DNA from: Scyliorhinus canicula
Taxonomy: Eukaryota
DNA: 64,000 bases
Direction of reading: 5' to 3'
NCBI RefSeq assembly: GCF_902713615.1
Contig: NC_052147.1
Span: forward strand, 2,976,001-3,040,000
The notes under the pieces were generated by a model. That model saw nothing but the letters and a program-made list of their open reading frames with translations, ran no database searches and was not told where the DNA came from. Position numbers and translations under genes: made by a program. How positions within the stretch are numbered: position 1 is the first letter of the stretch; each line of letters opens with the position of its first letter. This document shows, piece by piece, positions 1-36,931 of the stretch.

Positions 1-3000
1 CCCCAGTGGGTTAATGCCCCTCGCCCCCCAGTGGGTTAATGCCCCTCCCCCCCAGTGGGTTAATGCCCCTCCCCCCAGTGGGTTAATGCCCCTCCCCCCA
101 GTGGGTTAATGCCCCTCCCCCCAGTGGGTTAATGCCCCTCCCCCCAGTGGGTTAATGCCCCTCCCCCCCAGTGGGTTAATGCCCCTCCCCCCAGTGGGTT
201 AATGCCCCTCCCCCCCCCCAGTGGGTTAATGCCCCTCCCCAGTGGGTTAATGCCCCTCCCCCCCAGTGGGTTAATGCCCCTCCCCCAGTGGGTTAATGCC
301 CCTCCCCCAGTGGGTTAATGCCCCCCCAGTGGGTTAATGCCCCTCCCCCCAGTGGGTTAATGCCCCTCCCCCCCAGTGGGTTAATGCCCCTCCCCCAGTG
401 GGTTAATGCCTCTCCCCCAGTGGGTTAATGCCCCTCCCCCCAGTGGGTTAATGCCCCTCCCCCCAGTGGGTTAATGCCCCTCCCCCCGGTGGGTTAATGC
501 CCCTCCCCCCCGGTGGGTTAATGCCCCTCCCCCCCAGTGGGTAAATGCCCCTCCCCCCCAGTGGGTTAATGCCCCTCCCCCCCAGTGGGTTAATGCCCCT
601 CCCCCCCAGTGGGTTAATGCCCCTCCCCCCCAGTGGGTTAATGCCCCTCCCCCCAGTGGGTTAATGCCCCTCCCCCCAGTGGGTTAATGCCCCTCCCCCC
701 AGTGGGTTAATGCCCCTCCCCCCCCAGTGGGCTAATGCCCCTCCCCCCCAGTGGGTTAATGCCCCGCCCCTCCCCCAGTGGGTTAATGCCCCCCCCAGTG
801 GGTTAATGCCCCCCCAGTGGGTTAATGCCCCCCCAGTGGGTTAATGCTCCCCCACCCAGTGGGTTAATGCCCCTCCCCCCCAGTGGGTTAATGCCCCTCC
901 CCCCCAGTGGGTTAATGCCCCTCCCCCCCAGTGGGTTAATGCCCCTCCCCCCCAGTGGGTTAATGCCCCTCCCCCCAGTGGGTTAATGCCCCCCCCTGTG
1001 GGCCCCCCCAGTGGGTTAATCCCCCCCCAGTGGGTTAATGCCCCTCCCCCCCAGTGGGTTAATGCCCCTCCCCCCAGTGGGTTAATGCCCCTCCCCCCCA
1101 GTGGGTTAATGCCCCTCCCCCCCAGTGGGTTAATGCCCCTCCCCCCCAGTGGGTTAATGCCCCTCCCCCCCGGTGGTTTAATGCCCCTCCCCCCAGTGGG
1201 TTAATGCCCCTCCCCCCCAGTGGGTTGATGCCCCTCCCCCCAGTGGGTTAATGCCCCTCCCCCCCAGTGGGTTAATGCCCCTCCCCCCCCCCCAGTGGGT
1301 TAATGCCCCTCCCCAGTGGGTTAATGCCCCTCCCCCCCAGTGGGTTAATGCCCCTCCCCCAGTGGGTTAATGCCCCTCCCCCAGTGGGTTAATGCCCCCC
1401 CAGTGGGTTAATGCCCCTCCCCCCAGTGGGTTAATGCCCCTCCCCCCCCAGTGGGTTAATGCCCCTCCCCCAGTGGGTTAATGCCCCTCCCCCAGTGGGT
1501 TAATGCCCCTCCCCCCAGTGGGTTAATGCCCCTCCCCCCAGTGGGTTAATGCCCCTCCCCCCGGTGGGTTAATGCCCCTCCCCCCCGGTGGGTTAATGAC
1601 CCTCCCCCCGGTGGGTTAATGCCCCTCCCCCCCAGTGGGTTAATGCCCCTCCCCCCCAGTGGGTTAATGCCCCTCCCCCCCAGTGGGTTAATGCCCCTCC
1701 CCCCCCCCAGTGGGTTAATGCCCCTCCCCCCCAGTGGGTTAATGCCCCTCCCCCCCAGTGGGTTAATGCCCCTCCCCCCAGTGGGTTAATGCCCCTCCCC
1801 CCAGTGGGTTAATGCCCCTCCCCCCAGTGGGTTAATGCCCCACCCCCCCAGTGGGCTAATGCCCCTCCCCCCCAGTGGGTTAATGCCCCGACCCCTCCCC
1901 CAGTGGGTTAATGCTCCCCCCCCCCAGTGGGTTAATGCCCCCCCAGTGGGTTAATGCCCCCCCAGTGGGTTAATGCCCCTCCCCCCCCAGTGGGTTAATG
2001 CCCCTCCCCCCCCAGTGGGTTAATGCCCCTCCCCCCCCAGTGGGTTAATGCCCCTCCCCCCCAGTGGGTTAATGCCCCTCCCCCCCAGTGGGTTAATGCC
2101 CCTCCCCCCAGTGGGTTAATGCCCCCCCCTGTGGGCCCCCCCAGTGGGTTAATCCCCCCCCCCCAGTGGGTTAATGCCCCTCCCCCCCAGTGGGTTAATG
2201 CCCCTCCCCCCAGTGGGTTAATGCCCCTCCCCCCCAGTGGGTTAATGCCCTTCCCCCCCCCAGTGGATTAATGCCCCTCCCCCCCAGTGGGTTAATGCCC
2301 CTCCCCCCCGGTGGGTTAATGCCCCTCCCCCCCAGTGGGTTAATGCCCCTCCCCCCAGTGGGTTAATGCCCCTCCCCCCAGTGGGTTAATGCCCCTCCCC
2401 CCAGTGGGTTAATGCCCCTCCCCCCCCAGTGGGTTAATGCCCCTCCCCCCAAGTGGGTTAATGCCCCTCCCCCAGTGGGTTAATGCCCCTCCCCCCCCAG
2501 TGGGTTAATGCCCCTCCCCCCCCAGTGGGTTAATGCCCCTCCCCCCAGTGGGTTAATGCCCCTCCCCAGTGGGTTAATGCCCCTCCCCCCAGTGGGTTAA
2601 TGCCCCTCCCCCCCAGTGGGTTAATGCCCCTCCCCCAGTGGGTTAATGCCCCTCCCCCAGTGGGTTAATGCCCCCTCCAGTGGGTTAATGCCCCTCCCCC
2701 CAGTGGCTTAATGCCCCTCCCCCCAGTGGGTTAATGCCCCTCCCCCAGTGGGTTAATGCCCCTCCCCCAGTGGGTTAATGCCCCTCCCCCCAGTGGGTTA
2801 ATGCCCCTCCCCCCAGTGGGTTAATGCCCCTCCCCCCAGTGGGTTAATGCCCCTCCCCCCCAGTGGGTTAATGCCCCTCCCCCCCAGTGGGTTAATGCCC
2901 CTCCCCCCCAGTGGGTTAATGCCCCTCCCCCCCAGTGGGTTAATGCCCCTCCCCCCAGTGGGTTAATGCCCCTCCCCCCCAGTGGGTTAATGCCCCTCCC

Positions 3001-4441
3001 CCCCAGTGGGTTAATGCCCCTCCCCCCAGTGGGTTAATGCCCCTCCCCCCAGTGGGTTAATGCCCCTCCCCCCAGTGGGTTAATGCCCCTCCCCCAGTGG
3101 GTTAATGCCCCTCCCCCAGTGGGTTAATGCCCCTCCCCCCAGTGGGTTAATGCCCCTCCCCCCAGTGGGTTAATGCCCCTTCCCCCCAGTGGGCTAATGC
3201 CCCTCCCCCCCAGTGGGTTAATGCCCCGCCCCTCCCCCCAGTGGGTTAATGCCCCCCGCCCCCCCCCCCAGTGGGTTAATGCCCCCCCACCCAGTGGGTT
3301 AATGCCCCTCCCCCCCAGTGGGTTAATGCCCCTCCCCCCCAGTGGGTTAATGCCCCTCCCCCCAGTGGGTTAATGTCCCCCCCTGTGGGGCCCCCCAGTG
3401 GGTTAATGCCCCCCCCAGTGGGTTAATGCCCCTCCCCCCAGTGGGTTAATGCCCCTCACCCCCAGTGGGTTAATGCCCCTCCCCCCCCCCAGTGGGTTAA
3501 TGCCCCTCCCCCCCCCTGTGGGTTAATGCCCCTCCCCCCAGTGGGTTAATGCCCCTCCCCCCCAGTGGGTTAATGCCCCTCCCCCCCAGTGGGTTAATGC
3601 CCCTCCCCCCCCAGTGGGTTAATGCCCCTCCTCCCCCAGTGGGTTAATGCCCCTCCCCCCCCAGTGGGTTAATGCCCCTCCCCCCCAGTGGGTTAATGCC
3701 CCTCCCCCCCAGTGGGTTAATGCCCCTCCCCCCCAGTGGGTTAATGCCCCTCCCACCCAGTGGGTTAATGCCCCTCCCCCCCAGTGGGTTAATGCCCCTC
3801 CCCCCCAGTGGGTTAATGCCCCTCCCCCCCAGTGGGTTAATGCCCCTCCCCCCCCGTGGGTTAATGCCCCTCCCCCCCAGTGGGTTAATGCCCCTCCCCC
3901 CCCAGTGGGTTAATGCCCCTCCCCCCCAGTGGGTTAATGCCCCTCCCCCCCCAGTGGGTTAATGCCCCTCCCCCCCAGTGGGTTAATGCCCCCCCCCCCC
4001 CAGTGGGTTAATGCCCCTCCCCCCCAGTGGGTTAATGCCCCCCCCCCCCCAGTGGGTTAATGCCCCTCCCCCCCCAGTGGGTTAATGCCCCTCCCCCCCC
4101 AGTGGGTTAATGCCCCTCCCCCCCCAGTGGGTTAATGCCCCTCCCCCCCCAGTGGGTTAATGCCCCTCCCCCCCCAGTGGGTTAATGCCCCTCCCCCCCC
4201 AGTGGGTTAATGCCCCTCCCCCCCCAGTGGGTTAATGCCCCTCCCCCCCCAGTGGGTTAATGCCCCTCCCCCCCCAGTGGGTTAATGCCCCCCCCCCCCC
4301 AGTGGGTTAATGCCCCTCCCCCCCCAGTGGGTTAATGCCCCTCCCCCCCAGTGGGTTAATGCCCCTCCCCCCCAGTGGGTTAATGCCCCTCCCCCCCCCA
4401 GTGGGTTAATGCCCCTCCCCCCCCAGTGGGTTAATGCCCCT
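1..4441. repeat. Minisatellite, unit CAGTGGGTTAATGCCCCT + variable C-run (~24-28 bp), in intron 1 of the SAMD15-like gene; continues past the window start
   Basis: Directly visible tandem array of roughly 170 units. G-rich on the minus (SAMD15 sense) strand. Confidence 0.98.
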
Positions 4442-4452
4442 GAATTACTCGC

Positions 4453-4581
4453 CTTGTACTGGGGGAAGCCCAGTTTCTGGATCCATTTGGCCACATCCCT
4501 CTCCTGCCAGTGCTGACTGCGGGGTACCACCAGGGGGTGACAGCCGCAGCGACACTCCCCCGAGCACGGGTACTTAGCCAT
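4453..4581 (-). CDS. SAMD15: SAMD15-like sterile alpha motif protein, coding exon 1 (MAKYPCSGECRCGCHPLVVPRSQHWQERDVAKWIQKLGFPQYK); later exons lie left of the window
   Basis: WxxxDVAxWIxxLGFPQYK is the start of a SAM domain and resembles SAMD15 (recalled human WDPEEVAEWISQLGFPQYK). The exon ends AAG|GCGAGT. Head-to-head with TMED8, as recalled for the mammalian locus. Confidence 0.85.
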
Positions 4582-4608
4582 CCGGGCTCTCCGCGGCCCA
4601 CTGCACCC

Positions 4609-4712
4609 CGCCGCCCCAGCAACCGTTACCAGGATACCAGCTGGCGCCGCCCCAGCAACCGTTACCAGGATACCAGCTGGCGCGTCACCGCCGACACGGT
4701 TACCACGGCAAC
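4609..4712. promoter_or_regulatory. Cluster of RFX X-box-like motifs upstream of the SAMD15 ATG
   Basis: GTTACCACGGCAAC at 4699-4712. GTTACCAGGATAC at 4625-4637 and 4661-4673, inside a perfect 36-bp tandem duplication (4609-4644 / 4645-4680). Confidence 0.65.
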
Positions 4713-4903
4713 CCATCTGTATATACGGGTCATAAAACCGGTTATGTCCTAAGAAATTCACAATTGGGAAAATAACAAATGGGTCTCGAACAATCCGCTT
4801 TCCTTTCAAGTTTTGACACGTGAAATGCAATTTTCACCCCATTCTTCATTGGTTCCGTAATTACCCCTTTTACCACCCTATTCCGGTATTCCTGTCTGTG
4901 AAT

Positions 4904-7124
4904 CGGCAGTTTCCGTGCCGAGGTCGGGTCCCGCCTCCACTTCCGGTCCCACCCTCGGCAGTTTCCGTGCCGAGCTCGGCTCCCTCCTCCACTTCCGGTC
5001 CCACCCTCGGCAGTTTCCGTGCCGCCGCTCGGGCCCCGCCTCCACTTCCGGTCCCACCCTCGGCAGTTTCTGCGCCGCCGCTCGGCTCCCTCCTCCACTT
5101 CCGGTCCCACCCTCGGCAGTTTCCGTGTCGAGCTCGTCTCCCTCCTCCACTTCCGGTTCCACCCTCGGCAGTTTCCGAGCCGCCGCTCGGGCCCCGCCTC
5201 CACTTCCGGTCCCACCCTCGGCAGTTTCCGTGCCGAGCTCGGCTCCCTCCTCCACTTCCGGTCCCACCCTCGGCAGTTTCCGTGCCGCCGCTCGGGCCCC
5301 GCCTCCACTTCCGGTCCCACCCTCGGCAGTTTCTGCGCCGCCGCTCGGCTCCCTCCTCCACTTCCGGTCCCACCCTCGGCAGTTTCCGTGTCGATCTCGT
5401 CTCTCTCCTCCACTTCCGGTTCCACCCTCGGCAGTTTCCGAGCCGCCGCTCGGGCCCCGCCTCCACTTCCGGTCCCACCCTCGGCAGTTTCCGTGCCGCC
5501 GCTCGGGCCCCGCCTCCACTTCCGGTCCCACCCTCGGCACTTTCCGTCCGCCGCTCGGGCCCCGCCTCCACTTCCGGTCCCACCCTCGGCAGTTTCCGTG
5601 CCGCCGCTCGGGCTCCGCCTCCAGTTCCCGTCCCACATTCGGCAGTTTCCGTGCCGCCGCTCGGGCCCCGCCTCCAGTTCCGGTCCCACCCTCGGCTCCC
5701 TCCTCCAGTTCCGGTCCCACCCTCGGCAGTTTCCGTGCCGCCGCTCGGGCCCCTCCTCCAGTTCCGGTCCCACCCTCGGCAGTTTCCGTGCCGCCGCTCG
5801 GCTCCCTCCTCCAGTTCCGGTCCCACCCTCGGCAGTTTCCGTGCCGAGCTCGGCTCCCTCCTCCAGTTCCGGTCCCACCCTCGGCAGTTTCCGTGCCGAG
5901 CTCGGCTCCCTCCTCCAGTTCCGGTCCCACCCTCGGCAGTTTCCGTGCCGAGCTCGGCTCCCTCCTCCAGTTCCGGTCCCACCCTCGGCAGTTTCCGTGC
6001 CGCCGCTCGGGCCCCTCCTCCAGTTCCGGTCCCACCCTCGGCAGTTTCCGTACCGAGCTCGGGCCCCGCCTCCACTTCCGGTTCCACCCTCGGCAGTTTC
6101 CGAGCCGCCGCTCGGGCCCCGCCTCCACTTCCGGTCCCATCCTCGGCAGTTTCCGTGCCGCCGCTCGGGCCCCGCCTCCACTTCCGGTCCCACCCTCGGC
6201 ACTTTCCGTCCGCCGCTCGGGCCCCGCCTCCACTTCCGGTCCCACCCTCGGCAGTTTCCGTGCCGCCGCTCGGGCCCCGCCTCCAGTTCCGGTCCCACCC
6301 TCGGCAGTTTCCGTGCCGAGCTCGGCTCCCTCCTCCAGTTCCGGTCCCACCCTCGGCAGTTTCCGTGCCGAGCTCGGCTCCCTCCTCCAGTTCCGGTCCC
6401 ACCCTCGGCACTTTCCGTCCGCCGCTCGGGCCCCGCCTCCACTTCCGGTCCCACCCTCGGCAGTTTCCGTGCCGCCGCTCGGGCTCCGCCTCCAGTTCCC
6501 GTCCCACATTCGGCAGTTTCCGTGCCGCCGCTCGGGCCCCGCCTCCAGTTCCGGTCCCACCCTCGGCTCCCTCCTCCAGTTCCGGTCCCACCCTCGGCAG
6601 TTTCCGTGCCGCCGCTCGGGCCCCTCCTCCAGTTCCGGTCCCACCCTCGGCAGTTTCCGTGCCGCCGCTCGGCTCCCTCCTCCAGTTCCGGTCCCACCCT
6701 CGGCAGTTTCCGTGCCGAGCTCGGCTCCCTCCTCCAGTTCCGGTCCCACCCTCGGCAGTTTCCGTGCCGAGCTCGGCTCCCTCCTCCAGTTCCGGTCCCA
6801 CCCTCGGCAGTTTCCGTGCCGAGCTCGGCTCCCTCCTCCAGTTCCGGTCCCACCCTCGGCAGTTTCCGTGCCGCCGCTCGGGCCCCTCCTCCAGTTCCGG
6901 TCCCACCCTCGGCAGTTTCCGTACCGAGCTCGGGCCCCGCCTCCAGTTCCGGCCCCACCCTCGGCAGTTTCCGTGCCGCCGCTCGGGCCCCGCCTCCAGT
7001 TCCGGTCCCACCCTCGGCTCCCTCCTCCAGTTCCGGTCCCACCCTCGGCAGTTTCCGTGCCGAGCTCGGGCCCCGCCTCCAGTTCCGGTCCCACCCTCGG
7101 CAGTTTCCGTGCCGAGCTCGGCTC
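4904..7124. repeat. CpG-rich ~52-53 bp minisatellite (~42 units) filling the SAMD15/TMED8 bidirectional promoter interval
   Basis: Unit CGGCAGTTTCCGTGCCG(AG/CCG)CTCGG(CTCCCT/GCCCCG)CCTCCA(C/G)TTCCGGTCCCACCCT. Many units carry an ETS motif (CACTTCCGG) and/or a GC box (CCCCGCCTCC). Ends about 30 nt before the TMED8 ATG. Confidence 0.97.
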
Positions 7125-7156
7125 TCTCCGGAGGCCGCGGACGCGCTGAGGTGACG

Positions 7157-7379
7157 ATGGCGAGCGGGGCGGCCGCCGGGCGGCAGTGCTCTGGGCTGCG
7201 GGGCGGGGGCTCAGCCCGCGGAGAGGCGGAGGCAGAGGCAGAGGCGGAGGCGGAGGCGGAGGCGGGCACCGGGAGGACGCCGAGCGGCAGCAGCGGGATG
7301 AAGATGGGGATGAGCCTGGGAGTGCCGGCGGCCGACAAACCGCCGCAGGAGCCGGAGGAGCGGCCGGAGCCCGAGCCGG
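7157..7379 (+). CDS. TMED8: TMED8 coding exon 1 (MASGAAAG...EAEAEAEAEAEA...EPEERPEPEP, phase 1)
   Basis: ATG in good Kozak context (acgATGg), CpG-island context, donor G|GTGAGC, phase-compatible with the next exon. Low-complexity N-terminus, so identity rests on the downstream exons. Confidence 0.75.
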
Positions 7380-7440
7380 GTGAGCGGCGGCCGGGAGTCG
7401 GGGGCCGGGGGCCGGGGGGGAAGAGGAGAGGAGGGGGAGA

Positions 7441-8370
7441 CCCTCACCCCTCACCCCTCACCCCTCACCCCTCACCCCTCACCCCCCACCCCTCACCCCT
7501 CACCCCCCCACCCCACCCCTCACCCCCCCACCCCCACCCCTCACCCCCCCACCCCCCACCCCTCACTCTCATTCTTCCCTTCACCCCCTTCACCATCTTC
7601 ACCCCCTTCACCCCCTTCACCCCCTTCACCCCTTCACCATCTTCACCCCTTCACCATCTTCACCCCTTCACCATCTTCACCCCATCACCATCTTCACCAT
7701 CTTCACCCCTTCACCATCTTCACCATCTTCACCCCTTCACCATCTTCACCCCTTCACCATCTTCACCCCTTCACCATCTTCACCCCATCACCATCTTCAC
7801 CATCTTCACCCCTTCACCATCTTCACCCCTTCACCATCTTCACCCCTTCACCATCTTCACCATCTTCACCCCTTCACCATCTTCACCCCTTCACCATCTT
7901 CACCCCTTCACCATCTTCACCCCTTCACCATCTTCACCCCTTCACCATCTTCACCCCTTCACCATCTTCACCCCCTTCACCATCTTCACCCCTTCACCAT
8001 CTTCACCCCTTCACCATCTTCACCATCTTCACCCCCTTCACCCCTTCACCATCTTCACCATCTTCACCCCTTCACCATCTTCACCCCTTCACCATCTTCA
8101 CCCCCTTCACCATCTTCACCCCTTCACCCCCTTCACCATCTTCACCCCTTCACCCCTTCACCATCTTCACCCCTTCACCATCTTCACCCCCTTCACCCCC
8201 TTCACCCCTTCACCCCTTCACCCCTTCACCATCTTCACCATCTTCACCATCTTCACCATCTTCACCCCTTCACCATCTTCACCCCTTCACCCCCTTCACC
8301 CCTTCACCCCCTTCACCCCTTCACCATCTTCACCCCTTCACCATCTTCACCCCCTTCACCATCTTCAGCC
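7441..8370. repeat. Short-unit tandem array (TCACCCC(T) / TCACCATCT, 7-9 bp units) at the start of TMED8 intron 1
   Basis: Directly visible; starts about 60 nt after the exon 1 donor. Confidence 0.97.
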
Positions 8371-10043
8371 CATTCTCTGCTCTCCCCCCTCCCCCTCCCC
8401 CCCCCTCCCCCTCCCCCCTCCCCCCTCCGCCCAGGATGTGTGAGTGTGAAGACGTTGTTGGGTTTGGTGGGATTTCAGGATCATTCATCAATGTTCATGT
8501 CTGTCAGTCTCTCTGTGGAAATGGTTGGATTGTTGTGAATCTCTCTCTAACCAACAAGTTAAATGCCAAGAGTCTATGTTTTGAAGGGATAAATTGAGAA
8601 TGCAGAAATACACCAGTAAATTTGACAGATGTATTTTGATCATCGTTTAGACCTGTGAAATTGGACACGAAGATGGTTTTCTTCAAGCTAAATGTCGCTA
8701 GTGTTATTTATGGTGACAGCGATTTAATAGAATCCACGGTTAGTCTGGAATTCTCTGCCTAACAGTGTGGGACAGGCAGGTTCAGTTGCTGCTTTTAAAG
8801 GATAAACAAGAACCTGAAGAGAGAATATCCGTTGTGTTATGTGGAGCGGGAGTGGGGCCAGCTGAGGGTTAGCATGATTGTGACTGGTTGAATGGCTGCT
8901 TTCTGTGCTGTAGCCATTCTGTGATGTGGTTGTGGCTTCAACCACTTCATTAAAAATGGTCGGAGAGTGGGCACAGAGGGGGCAGTTACAGAAAGAACAC
9001 CATGCACACTGCCAACCCCAGACTTATTGCAAGAAAATGAAATGCAGTGGAATTTGGGATTTTTAAAACAAATTGGGAGCTTGGAGATGTCTTGGTGATA
9101 CTGCGATGCTGCAGTGTTTCTTTTGCAGCTTGTTACATTTGAACAATGGCAGCAATGCACTGTTGCCATGCTGATAGGGAAAACTGAGGGTATCCAATAA
9201 TAAATTGGTTTGCGCCAAACCCAAAGGTTTTGTTTGCTAAAGACATCTGTGCATTTGTTCTCTGCATAATCTGCAACAATCTGTATTATTGCACCATCAT
9301 AGTTCCAGGGGAGTTGCTGACATCAAGCACAGAATGGCATCAGGGATGGAGGGACCTCAGTGAGATGGAGGAGCTGGGACTGTCGTTCCAGCTATGGAAA
9401 TTGGGCTTCAAAGTAATGGAGGATTCTGATCCAGCAAATAAAGAGGCAGAAGCTTTGCTCAGCAGGGACACACAGATTTATGGCGATTGGCTAAAGGACC
9501 AGAGAGGGCGATGAGGAAGTAATCTTTTTATGCTGTAAGTTGTTGTGACCTGGAGTTTGCTGCCTGGAATCCGATTCAACAATAACTTTCAAAATACATT
9601 GGACTTGATGGAAAAATAATGATGAGGATTTGGGGGAGATTGAGGGTGATCGATAAGCTCTGGTGCAGGCATAATGGCGACATTGTGTTCTGTATCATTC
9701 TAAGACGTTCAAAAATTAAACTTTCAGTTTTACTGATTTCTCTGTAGTTTATCTGGAGTTTCTTCCTATTTTTTCTTTTCACATAAAATATGGAACACCC
9801 CCCCCACCCCGGTATTTAAAACAGACTGATTTTACTGATCCCTATCTGATGAACGATTAATGGAAGTGGCTGCAATTTATGAACGGGGAATTATTTGTTT
9901 TTGTTTTTTTTTCATTTTGGGTGACGGTTAGAAGGGAAATTCCAACTGCACCAATCCTATTTTGGGAAATACAGACCCCCCCCCCCCCCCCTTATGCGCT
10001 GGGATCTCCCATGTCAGCAGCCTGGTGTACTGCTTGCATGTGT

Positions 10044-10725: not shown

Positions 10726-10960
10726 AGGTTTGATTCCGGCTTGGGTCACTGTCTGTGCGGAGTCTGCAGGTTCTCCCCATGTCTGCGTGAGTTTCCTCTG
10801 GGCGCTCCCGTTTCCTCCCACAAGTCCCGAAAGACGTGCTGTTAGATAATTTGGACATTCTGAATTCTCCCTCAGTGTACCTGAACAGGTGCCGGAGTGT
10901 GGCGACTAGGGGATTTTCACAGTAACTTCATTACAGTGTTAATCTAAGCCCACTATCTAA
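10726..10960 (+). mobile_element. 5'-truncated V-SINE with the ...GTGACAATAAA-type tail, split by the CR1 at 10962; tail resumes at ~12723-12760
   Basis: Matches intact copies at 31996 and 62206. The tail AAGCC|TACTTGTGACA is interrupted by the LINE. Confidence 0.8.
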
Positions 10961-10961
10961 G

Positions 10962-12722
10962 CCTGACTAGGGTAAGAGTAGGGCCAGTCAAGGACAGTAG
11001 TGGGAAGCTGTGCGTGGAGTCCGAGGAGATAGGAGAGATGCTAAATGAATATTTTTCGTCAGTATTCACACAGGAAAAAGACAATGTTGTCGAGGAGAAT
11101 ACTGAGATACAGGCTACTAGGCTAGAAGGGCTTGAGGTTCATAAGGAGGAGGTGTTAGCAATTCTGGAAAGTGTGAAAATAGATAAGTCCCCTGGGCCGG
11201 ATGGGATTTATCCTAGGATTCCCTGGGAAGCTAGGGAAGAGATTGCTGAGCCTTTGGCGTTGATCTTTATGTCATCATTGTCTACAGGAATAGTGCCAGA
11301 AAACTGGAGGATAGCAAATGTTGTCCCCTTGTTCAAGAAGGGGAGTAGAGACAACTCCGGTAACTATAGACCAGTGAGTCTTACTTCTGTTGTGGGCAAA
11401 GTCTTGGAAAGGTTTATAACAGATAGGATTTATAATCATCTGGAAAGGAATAATTTGATTAGCGATAGTCAACACGGTTTTGTGAAGGGTAGGTCATGCC
11501 TCACAAACCTTATTGAGTTCTTTGAGAAGGTGACCAAACAGGTGGACAAGGGTAAAGCAGTTGATGTGGTGTATATGGATTTCAGTAAAGCATTTGATAA
11601 GGTTCCCTATGGTAGGCTATTGCAGAAAATACGGATGCATGGGATTCAGGGTGATTTAGCAGTTTGGATCAGAAATTGGCTAGCTGGAAGAAGACAAAGG
11701 GTGGTGGTTGATGGGAAATGCTCTGACTGGCTTCCAGTTACTAGTGGTGTACCACAAGGATCTGTTTTGGGGCCACTGCTGTTTGTCATTTTTATAAATG
11801 ACCTGGAGGAGGGCGTAGAAGGATGGGTGAGTAAATTTGCAGATGATACTAAAGTCGGTGGAGTTGTGGACAGTGCGGAAGGATGTTGCAAGTTACAGAG
11901 GAACATAGATAAGCTGCAGAGCTGGGCTGAGAGGTGGCAAATGGAGTTTAATGCAGAAAAGTGTGAGGTGATTCATTTTGGAAGGAATAACAGGAAGACA
12001 GAGTACTGGGCTAATGGTAAGATTCTTGGTAGTGTGGATGAGCAGAGAGATCTCGGTGTCCATGGACATAGATCCCTGAAAGTTGCCACCCAGGTTGATA
12101 TGGTTGTTAAGAAGGCGTACGGTGTGTTAGCTTTCTTGGTAGAGGGATTGAGTTTCGGAGCCATGAGGTCATGTTGCAGCTGTACAATACTCTGGTGCGG
12201 CCGCATTTGGAGTATTGCGTGCAGTTCTGGTCGCTGCATTATAGGAAGGATGTGGAAGCATTGGAAAGGGTGCAGAGGAGATTTACCAGGATGTTGCCTG
12301 GTATGGAGAGAAGATCTTATGAGGGAAGGCTGAGGGATTTGAGGCTGTTTTTGTTAGAGAGAAGAAGGTTAAGAGGTGACTTAATTGAGGCATACAAGAT
12401 GATCAGAGGATTAGATCGGGTGGACCGTGAGAGCCTTTTTCCTCGGATGGTGATGTCTAGCACAAGGGGACATAGCTTTAAATTGAGGGGAGATAGATAT
12501 GGGACAGATGTCAGAGGTAGGTTCTTTACTCAGAGAGTAGTAAGGGCGTGGAATGCCCTGTCTTCAACTGGAATGGACTCGCCAACACTAAATGCATTCA
12601 AATGGTCATTGGATAGACATATGGATGATAAGGGAATAGTGTAGGTGGGCTTTAGAGTGGCTTCACAGGTCGACGCAACATCGAGGGCCGAAGGGCCTGT
12701 ACTGCGCTGTAATGTTCTATGT
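10962..12722 (+). mobile_element. CR1-clade LINE, 5'-truncated ORF2 (reverse transcriptase) with a frameshift and intact 3' tail
   Basis: ORFs 11014-12333 and 12171-12644 carry [54 protein letters not shown]. The 3' end reads GGGCCGAAGGGCCTGT...TTCTATG. Confidence 0.95.
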
Positions 12723-12959: not shown

Positions 12960-15900
12960 CCTGCTGTGCCATTCATTATCATCAAACTCAGTAACTTTGA
13001 ACCCTTTAGCCCCAAGTGCTATACCTAACTGCTCAAAACATACAATGATTTGGCCTCAGTTGCTTCCTGTGGTAACGAATTCCACAGACTCACCACTCTC
13101 TGGGTGAAGAAATTTCTCCTCATCTCTGTCCTAAATGGTCTACCCCGTATCCTCAGACTGTGACTGCTGGTTCTGTACACACCCACGTGGCATCAGGAAC
13201 ATCCTTTCTGCATCTACCCTGTCCAGTCCTGTTAGAATTCTATAGGTTTCTATGAGATTCCCCCTCATTCTACTGAACTCTAGTGAATATAATCCTAACC
13301 GACACAATCTCTCCTCATACGTCAGTCATGCCATCCCTGGAATCAGTCTGGTAAACCTTCGCTGCACTCCCTCGAGAGCAAGAACATCCTTCCTCAGATA
13401 AGGAGACCAAAACTGCACACAATATTCCAGGTGTGGCCTCACCAAGACACTGTAATAGTAGCAATACATCCCTACTTCTATACTCAACCTCTCGCTCTGA
13501 AGGCCAACATACCATTTGCCTTCTTTACTGTCTGCTGCACCTGCATGCTTACCTTCAGCGACTGGTATATGAGGACATCTAGGTCTCATTGCACATTCCT
13601 CCCTCTAAATCTATAGCAATTCCTGTTTTTGCTACCAAGGTGGATAAACTCCCATTTATCCCTATACAGCATCTGCCATTCATGTGCCCACTCACTCAAC
13701 TTGTCCAAATCACACTGAAGGACCTCTGCATCCTCCTCACAGCTCACCCTCCCACACAACTTTGTGTCATCTGCAAATCTGGAGATAATACATTTAGTTC
13801 CCTCGTCGAAATCATTGATAAATATTGTGACTAGCTAGTGTCCCAGCACCAATCCCTGTGATACCCCACTAGTCACTGCCTGCCATTTGGAAAAAGATCC
13901 TTAATTCCTACTCTTTGTTTCCGTCTGCCAACCAGTTTACTATCCATCTCAATACACTACCCCAATCCCATGTGCTTTAATTTTAAACACTAATCTCTTA
14001 TATCGGACTTTGTCGAAAGTCTTCTGAAAGTCCAGATATCCCACATCCACTGCCTGCCTCTCCATTCTACTAGTTACACCCTCGAAGAATTCCAGTAGAT
14101 TTGTCAAGCATGATTTCCCTTTTGTAAATCCATGCTGACTCCCTCCCATCCTGCCTCTGTTTTCCAAGTGCTGTGCTGGTTTAGCACAGGGCTAAAGAGC
14201 TGGCTTTGAAAGCAGACCAAGGCAGGCCAGCAGCATGGTTCAATTCTCGTACCAGCCTCCCCGAACAGGCTGAATGTGGCGACTAGGGGCTTTTCACAGT
14301 AACTTCATTTGAAGCCTACTTGTGACAATAAGCGATTTTCATTTCATTTTTTCATTCATAAAATCGTTTATAGTGGAACTTGAGAAATTTTCCAGAATAC
14401 GGACGGCAGGCTGACTGGTCTATAATTCCGTTTTCTCTCTACCTCCTTTTCAAATAGTGGGATTACATTAGCTATCCACCAATCTGTAGGAACTGTTACA
14501 GAGTCTATAGAATCCTGCAAGGTGACCACTAATGCATCCACTATTTCTGGGGCCATTTCCTTCAGTACTCTGGGATGTAGATTATCAGGCTGTGGGGGTT
14601 TATCGGCCTTCAAACCCATCGATTTCCACAACACCATTTCCCCATTAATGCAGATCACCTTCAATAAACGCTGTGTTACCCAACATTTCTGGTATGTTAT
14701 TTGTGTTCTCCCTTGTGAACCACATATGTATTTAGATGGTCAGCCATTTTTTTGTTCCCCATTATAAATTCCCCAGTTTCTGACTGTTAAGGGACCTACA
14801 TTTGTCTTCACCAATATTTTTCTCTTCACATATCTATGGAAGCTTTTACTGTTGGATTTTATATTCCACACAATCTTATTCTCATACTCTATTTTCCCCT
14901 TCTTAATCAATCCCTTTGTCCTCCTTTCCTGAACTGCTCCCAATTCTCAGATCTGTTGTTTGTATACCTCTTCCTCGGATCTACTACACTCTCTAATTTC
15001 CCCTGTAAGCCATGGATTGGCCACCTTTCTCGATTTACCTTTGTGACAGACAGGAATGAACAATTGTTGCAGCTCCCTCATGCGCTCCTTGAATATTTGC
15101 CATTGCCTATCCACTGTCATCTCCTTAAGTAACATTCTAATCCATCATCGCCAACCTGTACTCATACTATCGTGGTTTCCTTCATTTATAATCGGGACCC
15201 TAGTCTCAGAATCAACTACTTCACTCTCCCTCTTGAAAAAATTCTATCATATTATGGTCACTCATCCACAAGGGGTCGCACACGACAAGATTGCCACTTA
15301 TTCCTTCCTCATTGCACAATACCCCGTTTAGGATAGCCTGTTCTCTAGTTGGTTCCTCAATCTAGTGGCCCAGAAAACCATCCCGTACATACTCCAGGAA
15401 TTCTCCCTCTATTGTATTGTTACTAATTTTACTTTCCCAATCTATATGCAGATTAAAATCACCCATAATTACAGATGTTCCTTTATCGCATGAGTCTCTA
15501 ATTTCCTGTTTAATGCCATTCCCAACATCACCACTGCAGTTTGGAGTTCTATATACAACCCCCAGTAATGATTTTTTCCCCTTGGTGTATCTCAGCTTTA
15601 CCCATACAAATTCCACATCTTTGGAGCGAATATCCTTCATCGCTATTGTGTTCATTTCCGCTTTAACCAGCAATGTCATTCCACTGCCTTTTCCTTTTTG
15701 TCTGTCCTTCCTACATACTGACTACTCCTGGATGTTCAGTTCCCATTCCTGGTCATTCTGCAGCCGTGTCTCCATAATCCCGACTATATCATACCCGTTT
15801 ACATCTATCGTGCAATTAATTAATCCATTTGATTCCTAATGCACCACGCATTAAGGCACAAAGCCTTAAGGCTTGTCTTTTTACCGTTACTTGCCCCGTT

Positions 15901-19956: not shown

Positions 19957-20053
19957 AACCTGAGCAGGACTCGGAGGCTGATGTGACCTCTCAACTGTCC
20001 GGTCTACAAGTGTCGGAAGGGAGTAAGCAGAGCCAGACAGAGACGGAAAACAG
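19957..20053 (+). CDS. TMED8: TMED8 coding exon 2 (EPEQDSEADVTSQLSGLQVSEGSKQSQTETEN, phase 1 to 2)
   Basis: Acceptor TGCAG|, donor CAG|GTAATC, open in the frame required by exon 1. Sequence poorly conserved, so called from splice signals and phase. Confidence 0.65.
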
Positions 20054-20876
20054 GTAATCGATCTCACTGGTATCGGGAGTGAAGATGGGAGAGTTACAAA
20101 TTGATTAGTCCAACTGGTCCATGTTGATATTTATGCCCGACCTGAACCTTGTCTCATAGTTTATTGCAGCTTATCACCATACCCTTTGTTTCCTTATTTG
20201 TCTCGGTATCATACCTTGTTTTATAATCCATCTGTGCTATTAACCTGCCCGTGGTCGCAAGTTCCACAGTCGCACCACTCTCTGGGTAAAGATATTTCTC
20301 CAGAATTCACAATTGGATTCATTGATGACTGTTATGTAGTTGTGACCTCTAGCTGGGGTTTCGAGTGGAAATATCTCTATGTTATGCCTGTCAAGCCCCT
20401 TTCGTAACCTCAACGGCCACTATCAGGTCACCCTCAATCTTCTCTTTACTGTTCATGTTGTAATTACAGTTAAACTGGTGTTGCCAACTGGAGCAAACAC
20501 TTTCTCAATGACTAGATAAATCTCTTACCGTAGCAGTGTTGACCTTCAAATAATGTTCTGGGATGTGTACGTCACTGGCAAAGCAATATCCATCTCCAAT
20601 TGCCTTGAAGAAGATGGTGGTGAGATACCTTTTTGAACCGCTGAAGTCTGTGTGGTGTAGATAGTCACGGTGATGTTAGGTAAGCTGCTGCAGGATTTTG
20701 GCTCAGTAACACTGAAGGAACAGCGATATGATTTCAAGTCCTAAATATTTTCCTACTTTACAGCAATTATTTCACTTCAAGCAGTGCCTATAACCCGTAA
20801 ATTTAATTGAGACACTCGGGTCTTGCCAGGTGCTACTTCAATGCAAGTTCTTTTGTGCATGGTGTGCGACGCTTAG

Positions 20877-26934: not shown

Positions 26935-26987
26935 TGACGGTGCAGCAACTGTTATTTTTGAGTAAGAATGTGTTTTTCTCTTGAGAG

Positions 26988-27096
26988 ATCACAGAATGCA
27001 AGACCGGTGACCGAGGAAGCAGAAGGGAATGATGGAGACGGTTCTGGAATAACAGTGGTGGCGACAACCGAGCCAGAAGATGAAGAACCAGAGCAG
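26988..27096 (+). CDS. TMED8: TMED8 coding exon 3 (RSQNARPVTEEAEGNDGDGSGITVVATTEPEDEEPEQ, phase 2 to 0)
   Basis: Pyrimidine tract TGTTTTTCTCTT, acceptor GAG| needed for phase, donor CAG|GTGTGA, acidic open frame. Exact acceptor uncertain. Confidence 0.6.
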
Positions 27097-29765: not shown

Positions 29766-30690
29766 GAGACAATAAAATGTCAAAACTAGGGCCTATAACC
29801 CAAGTCCAAGTCAAAAATGTTTATCAAAAACTGCAGTGACCCTGGTATTGAAACTGTATATTTCCTGATACCGTTTACAAAATTTTCTGTGACCCCTCAA
29901 CCTATTGTCATCTGTAAACGTGGATAAACAACACACTATTTATTCAGTCAACTCATTTATGATGGTGACTTTTAGAGATCACACAAATCAAAGGATGCTT
30001 CCTTTATCCCTACAATGTCCAACAGCCCAATCAAATTCCAATGCTCGTCACAAAGTTTCCTCCAATTTTGTGCACGCTTATTTTTTGTCAAACTTCTCAC
30101 GAAGAACCTTATCAAATAACTTCTGGAAATCCATGTAGGCATCCATAGATTCTATTAACCTCCAGAATTCATTTGGAATATCCAGACATGATCTGCCCTT
30201 CATAAATCCACATTAACTCTCTTTGATCTGATACTTGCACAAGTTCTCATGTCATTGACTCCAGCAACTTCCCGACAGTTAGCGTTAAATTGACGTGTCT
30301 GTGCATGTCTTCTTTCTCTCTCTCTCTGTCGATAAATAATGGAGTAGCATGGACAATACAAAAGGCAGAATTTTGGAATCGGGGGAAATTTGTGACCAAC
30401 GTACAAGCAATTTCATCAAGTGATTCATTTAATTCCCTGGAACCGAAAAGCATCATCAGGCTTTGGAGCTTTGTCTCTTGGGTCTCATTATTGTCTCCAT
30501 TTTTACTTGTATTAATCCCTCCTGGTGACTTATTTTTAGGTCCTGTCCCAGAATGTGCACTATTGTGGCTTCTAGAACTTACCCGCCCCCGGAGAGGGTT
30601 TTGTGAAGTGAGCTGATTCTTAGACTGAATCGGTTTGGAAAGGTGGTGCTGCACTGATAGTTAGATGCATCTTTTCTTGTTGCCCTTCAG

Positions 30691-30832
30691 GATGTTAAGG
30701 ATAGCAAACCTGGTGACACAGCAGTTGGGGCATATCGGGTCCGCAAAGTCAGCAGTGATTCTGTCATAATTCAGTCTGACCATGGAGGCCCAGAAAAGCT
30801 ACCAGCAGACCCATCAGAAGGTCCCGGGAGAG
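30691..30832 (+). CDS. TMED8: TMED8 coding exon 4 (DVKDSKPGDTAVGAYRVRKVSSDSVIIQSDHGGPEKLPADPSEGPGR, phase 0 to 1)
   Basis: Strong acceptor CTTTTCTTGTTGCCCTTCAG| and donor AG|GTAAGT. YRV..DSVIIQSDH resembles recalled TMED8 YQV..DIVMIQSEH. Confidence 0.85.
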
Positions 30833-32305: not shown

Positions 32306-32511
32306 GAATACATTCAGTGGCATTACCATCACTGAATCCCCTTGATCAGCATCCTGTAGGCTACCATTGACCTGAAATTGAACTGTACTAGCCATATAAA
32401 TATAGGGATGGGCAATAGGTGCTGGCTGAGCCAGCGACGCCCACATCTGGTAAATTAATTTTAAAACTCCCTGAAGTGTGGCCAGCTGTATTTTTCCTGT
32501 TTGCCTTTCAG

Positions 32512-32799
32512 TTGTTCCTGTAATTGATGCTGCGTCCACCTGGATGACCGTGGAGATGAATGAGTTCAAAGAGAAGATACGAAGCCAGAAGGCCGGACTG
32601 ATGAAGGTGAACCGTGGGAACATAGTGACAGTGCGGGTTCCTACCCACCCAGAGGGCACCTGTGTTTGCTGGGACTTTGCCACAGACACCTACGATATCG
32701 GCTTCGGGGTGTACTTTGAGTGGGCGCCTGTGACCAATACAGAAATTACCGTGCTGGTCAGTGAATCGAGCGATGAGGAGGATGAGGAAGATGTAGAAG
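32512..32799 (+). CDS. TMED8: TMED8 coding exon 5, GOLD domain N-terminal half plus acidic tract (phase 1 to 1)
   Basis: RGNIVTVRVPTHPEGTCVCWDFATDTYDIGFGVYFEWAPVTNTEITVLVSESSDEEDEE is the TMED8/ACBD3 GOLD signature. Acceptor TTTCAG|, donor AG|GTAACG. Confidence 0.95.
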
Positions 32800-34895: not shown

Positions 34896-36668
34896 GGTGC
34901 TGCGCTCCCTCGGCCTGACCCTCCTCGGCCCACCCCCTCTGCCGGCGCGGCGCTCCCTCGGCCCTGCGCTCCCTCTGCCGGCGCGGCACTCCCTCGGCCC
35001 ACCCCCTCTGCTGGTGCGGCACTCCCTCTGCCGGCCCGGCGCCCCCCGGCCCTGTGCTCCCTCTGCCGCCCCCCCCCCCCCCCCCCCCCCCGGCCCTGCG
35101 CTCCCTCCGCCGGCCCACCCCCTCTGCCGGCCCGGCGCCCCCTCGGCCCACCCCCTCTGCCGGCCCGGCGCCCCCTCGGCCCACCCCCTCTGCCGGCCCG
35201 GCGCCCCCTCGGCCCACCCCCTCTGCCGGCCCGGCGCCCCCTCGGCCCACCCCCTCTGCCGGCCCGGCGCCCCCTCGGCCCACCCCCTCTGCCGGCCCGG
35301 CGCCCCCTCGGCCTACCCCCTCTGCCGGCCCTGCGCTCCCTCTGCCGGCCCGGCGCTCCCTCGGCCCTGCGCTCCCTCTGCTGGCCCGGCGCTCCCACGG
35401 CCAACCACCTCTGCCGGCACGGCGCCCTCTCAGCCCTGCGCTCCCTCTGCCGGCCCGGCGCTCCCACGGCCCACCACCTCTGCCGGTAAGGCGCCCTCTC
35501 GGCCCTGCGCTCCCTCGGCCTGACCCTCCTCGGCCCACCCCCTCTGTCGGCACGGCGCTCCCTCGGCCCACCTCCTCTGCCGGCACTTCGCTCCCTCGGC
35601 CCTGCGCTCCCTCTGCCGGCACGGCGCCCCCTCGGCCCACCTCCTCTGCCGGCCCTGCGCTCCCTCTGCTGGCCCTGCGCTCCCTCGGCCCTGCGCTCCC
35701 TCTGCCGACCCTGCGCTCCCTCGGCCCTGCGCTCCCTCTGCCGGCCCGGCGCTCCCTCTGCCGGCCCGGCGCTCCCTCGGCCCTGCGCTCCCTCTGCCGA
35801 CCCTGCGCTCCCTCTGCCGGCCCTGCGCTCGCTCTGCCGGCCCTGCGCTCCCTCTGCCGGCCCTGCGCTCCCTCGGCCCTGCGCTCCCTCTGCCGGCCCT
35901 GCGCTCCCTCTGCCGGCACTGCGCTCCCTCGGCCCTGCGCTCCCTCTGCCGGCCCGGCGCCCCCTCGGACCACCCCCTCTGCCGGCCCGGTGCTCCCTTG
36001 GCCCTGCGCTCCCTCTGCCGGCGCGGTGCTCCCTTGGCCCTGCGCTCCCTCTGCCGGCGCGGTGCTCCCTTGGCCCTGCGCTCCCTCTGCCGGCGCGGTG
36101 CTCCCTTGGCCCTGCGCTCCCTCTGCCGGCGCGGCGCTCCCTTGGCTCTGCGCTCCCTCTGCCGGCACGGTGCTCCCTTGGCCCTGCGCTCCCTCTGCCG
36201 GTGCGGCGCCCCCTCTGCCCTGCGTTGCCTCAGCCCACCCCCTCTGCCGGCGCGGTGCTCCCTTGGCCCTGCGCTCCCTCTGCCGGCGCGGCGCTCCCTT
36301 GGCTCTGCGCTCCCTCTGCCGGCGCGGTGCTCCCTTGGCCCTGCGCTCCCTCTGCCGGTGCGGCGCCCCCTTGGCCCTGCGCTCCCTCTGCCGGCGCAGT
36401 GCTCCCTTGGCCCTGCGCTCCCTCTGCCGGCGCAGTGCTCCCTTGGCCCTGCGCTCCCTCTGCCGGCGCAGTGCTCCCTTGGCTCTGCGCTCCCTCTGCC
36501 GGCGCAGTGCTCCCTTGGCTCTGCGCTCCCTCTGCCGGCCTGGCGCTCCCTCGGCTCTGCGTTGCCTCGGCCCACCCCCTCTGCCGGCGTGGCGTCCCCT
36601 CTGCCCTGCGTTGCCTCGGCCCACCCCCTCTGCCGGCCCGGCGCTCCCTCGGCCCGGCACCTCGGCCG
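34896..36668. repeat. CpG-rich compound minisatellite (modules CCCTGCGCTCCCTCTGCCGG / CTCGGCCCACCCCCT) in TMED8 intron 5
   Basis: Directly visible; ~33-36 bp higher-order units. Confidence 0.95.
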
Positions 36669-36931
36669 TGCAGTGCTTTGGAATTTGTGCTGTGGTATCT
36701 GCCGCACCCCATTTATTTGGAGTTTTCAGGCAGTGATTCTCAGCCTAGTTTAGCTGTACGGTACTGGCTTTGTTCCAATGACATCAGGTGGATCATCCAG
36801 CTATAAACCAGAGCCCTGGTGTATTGCCCTCTGCATCCACCTTTGCTAAATCATCTCCCTCTGGCCTCATCATTGTTCAACTGTCTCTCCCTCTTGTGCT
36901 GCTATTAATAACCGCATCCATTTTTCCCCAG

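What the first reader, a model, noticed from the sequence alone, without database searches (positions are those of the whole stretch)
4904..7124. Bidirectional promoter built almost entirely from a tandemly amplified GC-box/ETS cassette
Seen: about 2.2 kb of the 2.6 kb between the SAMD15 and TMED8 start codons is ~42 copies of a 52-53 bp unit, ending ~30 nt before the TMED8 ATG. About 18 units (by eye) carry a perfect CACTTCCGG, and many carry CCCCGCCTCC just before it. The array is polarised: perfect ETS sites fill the SAMD15-side third (to ~5580) and recur at ~6070-6450, while TMED8-proximal units carry CAGTTCCGG. Established: CCGGAAGTG (GABPA/ETS) and Sp1 GC boxes are hallmark motifs of vertebrate bidirectional promoters. 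Inference: the core promoter itself was amplified into a VNTR, so copy number and variant mix could tune both genes.
Basis: partly seen in the sequence, partly recalled or inferred. Interest (0 to 1): 0.7.

Follow-up and report, generated by a model that had tools for sequence, protein, structure and literature searches.

The report
Catshark TMED8 promoter module amplified 41-fold
In the small-spotted catshark, a 52-base piece of the TMED8 gene's own promoter has been copied about 41 times in a row, pushing TMED8 and its back-to-back neighbour SAMD15-like 2.2 kb apart; it is a clear, species-specific case of a known kind of promoter repeat, and its effect on expression is untested.

Summary
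Window 4903-7121 is a 2,219-bp array of 52/53-bp units with 41 'TCGGCAGTTTCCG' boxes and 43 ETS-type boxes. It fills 86% of the 2,575 bp between the start codons of SAMD15-like (minus strand, ATG 4581) and TMED8 (plus strand, ATG 7157).

The unit is not foreign. It matches the native TMED8 proximal promoter of three other elasmobranchs, which carry the box 2-9 times.

Eight other elasmobranchs, including Scyliorhinus torazame, have only 367-596 bp between the two start codons. The expansion is therefore specific to the catshark lineage. A sevengill shark amplified a different piece of the same promoter independently.

Spliced RNA contigs from three studies show TMED8 transcripts beginning at least 37 nt inside the last unit. 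A long-leader SAMD15-like transcript ends at the first unit. Interior units appear only weakly.

SAMD15-like also keeps a conserved X-box promoter in the unique flank, and the inferred start sites are now about 2.2 kb apart.

The reading 'amplified promoter' is supported. 'The whole array is the promoter and tunes both genes' is untested.

The scan has noted similar amplified promoters at other loci of this genome. This is a new member of a known kind (promoter VNTR).

The parts
4903..7121 (+). Tandem array of 52/53-bp units: 41 distal boxes and 43 ETS-type boxes. Unit types read A BCDEF BCDGF C HIJKLMMMK NOCHPMM HIJKLMMMK QJR S.
4938..4946 (-). First of 18 strict GABP-consensus sites (CCGGAAGTG on the minus strand). 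It lies about 25-60 nt upstream, in the SAMD15-like direction, of the three RNA contig ends.
7118..7130 (+). Single proximal box TCGGCTCTCTCCG, 39 bp before the TMED8 ATG. The same position is conserved (36-44 bp) in Heptranchias, Rhincodon and Pristis.
7085..7379 (+). TMED8 exon 1 as seen in RNA. The contig's 5' end is at 7085, which is 37 nt inside the array. The CDS starts at 7157 and the donor is at 7379|GT. The exon is spliced to exon 2 at 19957.
19957..20054 (+). TMED8 exon 2. Further coding exons lie at about 26986-27057, 30688-30831, 32511-32756 and 36931-37146 (GOLD_2 domain).
4453..4581 (-). SAMD15-like exon 1 coding part (43 codons, start of the SAM domain). The donor is a GC-type site, AAG|GCGAGT, at 4453/4452.
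4582..4915 (-). Long 5' leader of SAMD15-like. Contigs from three studies stop at 4886, 4904 and 4915. The leader carries four upstream ATGs (4849, 4842, 4733, 4716).
4699..4712 (.). X-box (GTTACCACGGCAAC, fits GTNRCCNNRGYAAC) 118 bp upstream of the SAMD15-like ATG. An X-box is present 15-65 bp upstream of that ATG in the three other species read.
4609..4683 (.). 36-bp tandem duplication (2.1 copies) in the SAMD15-like leader. RNA contigs of three studies carry one copy fewer, so it is polymorphic.
4451..7500 (.). One continuous CpG island (GC >55%, CpG o/e >0.65) across SAMD15-like exon 1, the array and TMED8 exon 1. CpG o/e in the array is 1.01.

Best explanation
This is a catshark-lineage expansion to about 41 units of the 52/53-bp module that makes up the native TMED8 proximal promoter. 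The module holds a distal 'TCGGCAGTTTCCG' box, a GC/CT box and an ETS-type box. It most likely grew by unequal exchange or replication slippage from an ancestral promoter that already carried the box two or more times at a spacing of about 50-90 bp.

The array lies inside one CpG island and has pushed two divergent genes, formerly about 370-600 bp apart, to 2.6 kb.

TMED8 still starts in the last unit. A long-leader SAMD15-like transcript starts at the first unit, just downstream of the first strict GABP site. SAMD15-like also keeps a separate conserved X-box promoter in the unique flank.

Because the expansion repeats the same module, each gene still faces the same sequence whatever the copy number, so the expansion is tolerated.

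Interior units are probably factor-bound, unmethylated CpG-island DNA with only weak initiation. They would act at most as redundant upstream sites.

Shown: the anatomy, the homology to the native promoter, the species distribution, and that transcripts reach both edges. Inferred: the exact start sites, the chromatin state, factor binding and tolerance of copy-number change.
For: - Array anatomy and motif counts.
- Higher-order duplications typical of minisatellite growth: 555 bp exact at offset 871, and a 263-bp five-unit block repeated twice.
- The unit aligns to the orthologous TMED8-proximal sequence. Scores are 54-67 in Heptranchias, 41-48 in Pristis and 38-41 in Rhincodon; the maxima of 200 shuffles are 28-30, 29-38 and 28-35.
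- The box occurs 2-9 times in every species read (five strict matches plus four one-base variants in Heptranchias), with the proximal copy 36-44 bp before the ATG.
- Start-codon gaps: 2,575 bp here, against 583 (S. torazame), 494 (Mustelus), 459 (Carcharodon), 574 (Rhincodon), 596 (Chiloscyllium), 399 (Heterodontus), 545 (Heptranchias) and 367 (Pristis). The non-array part here is 356 bp.
- Independent amplification of the proximal box in Heptranchias, 22 bp x 8.6.
- RNA: a spliced contig covers 7085-7379 at depth 104. Spliced SAMD15-like contigs of three studies end at 4886/4904/4915, although the k-mers there are unique. Interior unit contigs reach only depth 4-8.
- CpG o/e is 1.01, and only 1 of about 24 distinct unit variants is a CpG transition. 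This argues against germline methylation.
- The conserved X-box lies in the unique flank.
Against: - Contigs cannot fix start sites or expression levels. The single raw-read run gave only three reads.
- Copy number was not checked with long reads.
- For five of the eight comparison species only gene tables were available, not DNA. Those gaps rest on other groups' annotations and assemblies.
- CpG-rich minisatellites also occur in a TMED8 intron (34935-36655, o/e 0.78). CpG richness alone therefore does not mark a promoter.
- The window holds at least 10 large minisatellites, so arrays arise here readily without any function.
Confidence: 0.62

Rival explanations
1. The whole array is one active, multi-start bidirectional promoter, and its copy number and unit mix set the output of both genes.
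For: - Eighteen strict GABP sites plus GC boxes.
- Tandem GABP sites can start transcription on their own, and a single site can induce opposite-strand activity (PMC2077898).
- The array has no ATG on the TMED8 strand, so any internal start would give a clean leader.
- Unit contigs are present in RNA runs of two studies.
- Human VNTR length and motif content do affect nearby genes (PMC8024321; PMC10234305).
Against: - Interior unit contigs reach depth 4-8, although their k-mers are shared by several units, against 104 for TMED8 exon 1.
- The TMED8-proximal third carries only the GGAAC variant.
- SAMD15-like has its own conserved X-box, and the array-derived leader has four upstream ATGs.
- Eight other species manage with 367-596 bp.
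Confidence: 0.15
2. A passive minisatellite. Apart from the two edge units, the array is methylated or closed filler that merely separates two independent promoters.
For: - The window is full of minisatellites, including a CpG-rich one in an intron.
- Very recent duplications (555 bp exact) could explain the high CpG content by youth alone.
- There is little interior RNA signal.
Against: - The variant spectrum lacks the CpG-to-TpG excess expected of methylated DNA: 1 of about 24 events, although CpG bases make up 26% of the unit.
- The array is continuous with a CpG island on both sides.
- Every unit keeps the conserved promoter box.
Confidence: 0.15
3. An assembly artefact. The true array is much shorter and was inflated during assembly.
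For: A 555-bp exact internal duplicate. The nearest relative, S. torazame, has only 583 bp between the start codons.
Against: - The array has 19 distinct unit types in an ordered higher-order pattern.
- There are no N bases.
- RNA contigs from other animals reproduce both junctions and two interior unit junctions.
- A 2.2-kb array is far shorter than long reads (general knowledge).
Confidence: 0.06

Closest known systems
Vertebrate GABP/ETS- and Sp1-type CpG-island bidirectional promoters (Collins et al. 2007, PMC2077898)
   Same: Head-to-head gene pair, a CpG island, strict CCGGAAGTG sites and GC boxes. Orthologues have the two start codons 367-596 bp apart.
   Different: In the catshark the inferred start sites are about 2.17 kb apart. 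The intervening DNA is one amplified module. One partner (SAMD15-like) has its own X-box element, and only 18 of 43 ETS-type boxes are consensus.
Promoter-proximal VNTRs or minisatellites that affect nearby genes (PMC8024321, PMC8096271, PMC10234305; classic cases such as the INS and MAOA VNTRs, from my own knowledge)
   Same: Tandem units of tens of bp next to a start site, carrying factor motifs, growing by multi-unit duplication, with both motif mix and length as possible variables.
   Different: Here the unit is the conserved core/proximal promoter itself, and transcripts of both flanking genes start at the array's two edges. Polymorphism within the species has not been shown.
GGAA microsatellites used as ETS-bound enhancers (EWS-FLI1; PMC2654724, PMC10333306)
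   Same: Many tandem ETS cores whose number matters for activity.
   Different: Those are 4-bp repeats used by an oncogenic fusion protein. Here complete 9-bp GABP-type sites are spaced 52 bp apart in a normal germline promoter.
Spacer promoters and 60/81-bp enhancer repeats of the Xenopus rDNA spacer (my own knowledge, not checked here)
   Same: Pieces of a gene's own promoter are amplified in tandem upstream of that gene and act as upstream elements.
   Different: That is a Pol I system in a multicopy locus. This is a single-copy Pol II gene pair.
Other amplified promoters noted by this scan in the same genome (s1-243569 CDNF/HSPA14, s1-258574 RDH12/VTI1B, s1-249318)
   Same: A promoter module repeated in tandem between divergent catshark genes. 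One of them also shows independent amplification in another elasmobranch.
   Different: Those have 4-9 units over 200-500 bp. This one has 41 units over 2.2 kb. I did not re-test those notes.

Membership tests
Bidirectional promoter (divergent pair) | Two genes head to head on opposite strands | tested here: met
   SAMD15-like lies on the minus strand and TMED8 on the plus strand, both with spliced RNA contigs and tool-based names. The arrangement is conserved in 8 other elasmobranchs.
Bidirectional promoter (divergent pair) | Transcription start sites less than 1 kb apart (definition quoted in PMC2077898) | tested here: not met
   RNA contig 5' ends lie at 4886-4915 (minus-strand gene) and 7085 (plus-strand gene), about 2.17 kb apart. 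Contig ends only approximate start sites. A proximal SAMD15-like start near the X-box would be further away still.
Bidirectional promoter (divergent pair) | GABP/ETS consensus sites present and bound | tested here: inconclusive
   Eighteen strict CCGGAAGTG sites are present. Binding cannot be tested with these tools.
Bidirectional promoter (divergent pair) | Shared regulation or co-expression of the pair | not testable with these tools
   Contig depths of 11 against 104 in one run are not a measure of expression.
Minisatellite / VNTR | Head-to-tail units of 7 bp or more with higher-order duplication | tested here: met
Minisatellite / VNTR | Copy number varies among individuals | not tested
   Short-read contigs cannot span the array, and the single read-laying run was used on RNA. 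Only a between-species difference and a neighbouring 36-bp polymorphism were seen.
CpG island / non-methylated island | GC >55%, CpG o/e >0.65, length >300 bp | tested here: met
   4451-7500 passes. The array itself has o/e 1.01 and 11.4 CpG per 100 bp.
CpG island / non-methylated island | Unmethylated in the germline | not testable with these tools
   Indirect evidence only: 1 of about 24 distinct unit variants is a CpG transition.
RFX/X-box promoter (for SAMD15-like) | Conserved GTNRCCNNRGYAAC near the start site | tested here: met
   Present in all four species 15-118 bp upstream of the ATG. RFX binding is untested.

The most novel reading that the evidence does not exclude
Promoter minisatellites may be a genome-wide property of this shark. 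Cartilaginous-fish PRDM9 orthologues appear partial (Baker et al. 2017, PMC5519329). Meiotic breaks may therefore fall on CpG-island promoters and repeatedly amplify promoter modules. That would explain why the same TMED8 promoter expanded independently in two shark lineages, and why this scan keeps finding amplified bidirectional promoters in the catshark. The TMED8 array would then be the largest known scar of that process, and a natural series for testing how module number shapes a two-way promoter.
Probability: 0.15. Interest if true: 0.75.

Novelty: new member of a known kind. Interest (0 to 1): 0.45.

Why it matters
This is an unusually clean natural experiment. A deeply conserved promoter module, shared by sharks and a ray, was multiplied about 41-fold in one species while eight other elasmobranchs, a congener among them, keep a compact promoter. 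The conserved divergent gene pair still appears to fire from the two ends.

Comparing expression, start sites, chromatin and methylation between S. canicula and S. torazame would show directly what module number and spacing do to a CpG-island promoter pair. Comparing catsharks with different array lengths would do the same.

It also adds to signs that promoter amplification recurs in elasmobranch genomes.

Tried and rejected
- **Coding repeat.** All six frames of the array are free of stop codons. However, the array has no ATG on the plus strand and the TMED8 contig starts at 7085, so the open frames reflect base composition.
- **Known RNA family.** No Rfam hit in 4300-7600.
- **Dispersed satellite or transposon origin.** No unit motif occurs elsewhere in the 64 kb, and the unit is homologous to the orthologous promoter.
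- **Raw RNA reads for start sites.** The one raw-read run gave only three reads on the stretch, so no start-site table was produced.
- **Orthologous DNA.** Narcine, S. torazame isoform X2 and S. canicula SAMD15-like isoform X2 were not on record.
- **Blind ORF listing to find TMED8 exons** was too noisy. The contig's loose end and a word search replaced it.
- **Spliced model.** All protein searches were done exon by exon, by reference to stop-free ORFs.
- An early misreading put the SAMD15-like ATG at 4571. It was corrected to 4581.

Full report
**The observation**

Tandem Repeats Finder reports one array from 4903 to about 7125 with periods 52, 105, 158 and 451. I anchored units on the invariant box CGGCA[GC]TTTC. 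This gives 41 anchors spaced 52 or 53 bp apart, except for three 84-bp units that carry an extra 31-bp half unit. The array ends in a 25-bp partial unit at 7121.

Motif counts in the array:

| Motif | Count | Where |
|---|---|---|
| CACTTCCGG | 18 | units 1-13, 22-25 and 29 |
| CAGTTCCGG | 23 | includes every unit from 6457 to the TMED8 end |
| CAGTTCCCG | 2 | units 14 and 30 (5586 and 6457) |
| CCCCGCCTCC | 17 | 11 of them directly before CACTTCCGG |

None of the ETS-type, GC-box or CAGTTTCCG motifs occurs anywhere else in the 64 kb. The 18-nt box matches 38 times against 0.01 expected from shuffles.

**The genes**

On the plus strand an ATG lies at 7157.
- An RNA contig runs from 7085 to the donor at 7379 and continues with 30 letters that lie at 19957 in the window, which is exon 2.
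- Downstream exons carry a GOLD_2 domain (E = 8e-29 and 2e-22).
- Their best matches are shark TMED8 proteins, closest to Scyliorhinus torazame at 94-100% on exons 2-6.

On the minus strand an ATG at 4581 opens a 43-codon exon with a sub-threshold SAM_1 match. That exon is 100% identical to 'sterile alpha motif domain-containing protein 15-like isoform X2 [Scyliorhinus canicula]'.

I searched exon by exon, by reference, and did not build a joined model.

The two start codons are separated by 2,575 bp. The array makes up 2,219 bp of that (86%). The unique remainder is 321 bp on the SAMD15-like side and 35 bp on the TMED8 side.

**Where the unit came from**

The collection's gene tables gave the same head-to-head pair in eight other elasmobranchs. 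The number of bases between the start codons is:

| Species | Gap (bp) |
|---|---|
| S. canicula (this window) | 2,575 |
| S. torazame | 583 |
| Mustelus asterias | 494 |
| Carcharodon carcharias | 459 |
| Rhincodon typus | 574 |
| Chiloscyllium plagiosum | 596 |
| Heterodontus francisci | 399 |
| Heptranchias perlo | 545 |
| Pristis pectinata | 367 |

In the three loci with DNA (L001 Heptranchias, L002 Rhincodon, L003 Pristis) I confirmed that the table coordinates are the start codons.

Local alignment of two catshark units against those three intervals gives scores above all 200 shuffles. The shared core is the box TCGGCWNTYTCCG.
- It occurs twice in Pristis and twice in Rhincodon.
- Heptranchias has five strict matches, plus four variants with one extra G.
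- The proximal copy lies 36-44 bp before the TMED8 ATG in all four species. The catshark's single proximal copy is at 7118.

In Pristis and Heptranchias two boxes lie about 46-51 bp apart. In Rhincodon the last 300 bp form a degenerate repeat of about 55-60 bp that carries GC boxes.

The ancestral TMED8 promoter was therefore already a short repeat. The catshark amplified the distal box together with its spacer. Heptranchias independently amplified the proximal box as a 22-bp unit, 8.6 copies.

The perfect ETS site inside the catshark spacer has no counterpart at the aligned position in the other species. It is probably a catshark-lineage acquisition that was then amplified.

**How the array grew**

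Coding each distinct unit as a letter gives A BCDEF BCDGF C HIJKLMMMK NOCHPMM HIJKLMMMK QJR S. There is a 263-bp five-unit block repeated twice. There is also an 871-bp-offset duplication that is exact over 555 bp. These multi-unit duplications are the usual footprint of unequal exchange, and the exact one must be very recent.

**Transcripts**

I had one read-laying run. Three contig runs from three studies carry spliced forms of these genes, so they contain RNA.

*TMED8.*
- A 1,446-nt contig at depth 104 covers 7085-7379 and then exon 2. Its end at 7085 lies in the last ETS-type box.
- No repeat variant would force a break at that position. At least some transcripts therefore begin 37 nt or more inside the array.
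- This was expected, since only 35 unique bases precede the ATG.

*SAMD15-like.*
- Contigs spliced at 4452/4453 run through the ATG and the whole unique flank. They stop at 4904, 4915 and (in a second piece) 4886.
- The k-mers there and through unit 1 are unique. The stops are therefore ends of coverage, which places a start site at about the first unit.
- That is 25-60 nt downstream, in the gene's direction, of the first strict GABP site (4946-4938).

*Interior units.*
- They appear only as 82-83-nt collapsed unit contigs at depth 8 and 4.4.
- Their k-mers are shared by several units, so initiation or read-through in the interior is weak compared with the edges.

*Limits.* The one raw-read run put only three reads on the stretch. 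Contigs cannot give exact start sites, strand or expression level.

**SAMD15-like has its own promoter element**

A sequence fitting the X-box pattern GTNRCCNNRGYAAC lies 118 bp upstream of the ATG here. With the shorter 36-bp allele seen in all three RNA studies it would be 82 bp upstream. In Heptranchias, Rhincodon and Pristis an X-box lies 15-65 bp upstream.

X-boxes are RFX sites, typical of cilia- and testis-related genes (my own knowledge).

The long leader that reaches the array holds four upstream ATGs. One of them opens an 88-codon frame that overlaps the main start. That isoform is poorly suited for translation. A start between 4716 and 4581 would give a clean leader.

By contrast, the array and the TMED8 leader contain no ATG on the plus strand.

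**Methylation proxy**

The stretch 4451-7500 is one CpG island. The array has CpG o/e 1.01, against 0.35-0.39 for the bulk of the window.

Youth alone could explain this. However, among about 24 distinct unit variants only one is a CpG transition, although CpG bases are 26% of the unit. That spectrum does not depend on age and argues against germline methylation.

Two caveats apply.
- An intronic minisatellite (34935-36655) is also CpG-rich, with o/e 0.78.
- The window carries at least ten large minisatellites.

**Interpretation**

The array is the native TMED8 promoter module, amplified in the lineage leading to S. canicula after its split from S. torazame.

Both genes still face the same module, so both promoters survive any change in copy number. 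TMED8 fires from the last unit. A secondary SAMD15-like isoform fires from the first unit. The SAMD15-like X-box promoter is untouched.

The pair no longer meets the <1 kb start-site definition of a bidirectional promoter (PMC2077898), although its orthologues probably do.

CCGGAAGTG is the strict GABP site of that paper. According to work the paper cites, tandem GABP sites can start transcription on their own. The edge units are therefore plausible core promoters. Twenty-five of the 43 ETS-type boxes read GGAAC, including all those near TMED8, and should bind ETS factors poorly (my own knowledge).

Whether the interior acts as an upstream activating platform, and whether copy number varies and matters, remains untested.

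**Comparison and novelty**

Promoter-proximal VNTRs that influence genes are well known in humans (PMC8024321, PMC8096271, PMC10234305). So are arrays of ETS cores used as enhancers (PMC2654724).

This scan has already noted smaller amplified promoters between other divergent catshark genes (s1-243569, s1-258574, s1-249318). I did not re-test those notes.

The present case is the same kind of thing at a larger scale. It has good comparative evidence for its origin and for a parallel event in another shark. I rate it a new member of a known kind, of moderate interest.

The most novel reading still open is that promoter-targeted meiotic recombination drives recurrent promoter amplification in a lineage whose PRDM9 looks partial (PMC5519329). 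I have no direct evidence for this.

Noticed in passing
window 1-4441; L001 7015-9311; L003 8275-9479: SAMD15-like intron 1 begins directly with a minisatellite of more than 4.4 kb (24/25-bp unit, CpG o/e 0.03). Heptranchias has a 30-bp-unit array and Pristis has C-rich arrays at the same intron position, with unrelated units. The position is conserved while the sequence turns over.
   Followed up: partly
window 4447-4453 (minus strand): The SAMD15-like exon 1 donor is a GC-type site (AAG|GCGAGT), used in spliced contigs of three studies. Heptranchias has the canonical AAG|GTGAGG.
   Followed up: partly
window 4609-4644: One copy of a 36-bp tandem duplication is missing from RNA contigs of three independent studies. 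The reference animal therefore carries a longer allele in the SAMD15-like leader.
   Followed up: partly
window 7217-7275: A GAGGCG hexamer repeat inside TMED8 exon 1 encodes a Glu-Ala run. The X1 contig shows 12 gapped letters there, so the coding repeat length probably varies.
   Followed up: no
window 4558 (run X6): A low-depth contig (depth 2) joins 31 unrelated letters to 4558, inside the SAMD15-like coding exon, without a canonical splice site. It may be an alternative form or a chimeric contig.
   Followed up: no
window 34935-36655: A CpG-rich minisatellite (20/36-bp units, GC 0.80, CpG o/e 0.78) lies in TMED8 intron 5 and meets CpG-island criteria with no known start site.
   Followed up: no
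window 51399-51989 (minus strand): An intronless ORF has a UQ_con domain hit (E = 4e-13) and a UBE2V-like N-terminus. It is probably a retrocopy of a ubiquitin-conjugating enzyme variant gene.
   Followed up: no
window 7441-8432: TMED8 intron 1 opens with C-rich 7-, 17- and 26-bp arrays of about 1 kb (GC skew -1.0). The CpG island is thus bracketed by CpG-free minisatellites on both sides.
   Followed up: no
window 10948-12641, 13300-15700, 49500-50460: Several long ORFs look like LINE reverse-transcriptase fragments in TMED8 intron 1 and downstream of the gene.
   Followed up: no
L002 9715-9935 compared with window array: The whale-shark promoter carries the GC box as GAGGCGGGGC on the TMED8 strand. 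The catshark unit carries the reverse complement (GCCCCGCCTCC). The motif is the same but the orientation is opposite, and I have no explanation.
   Followed up: no
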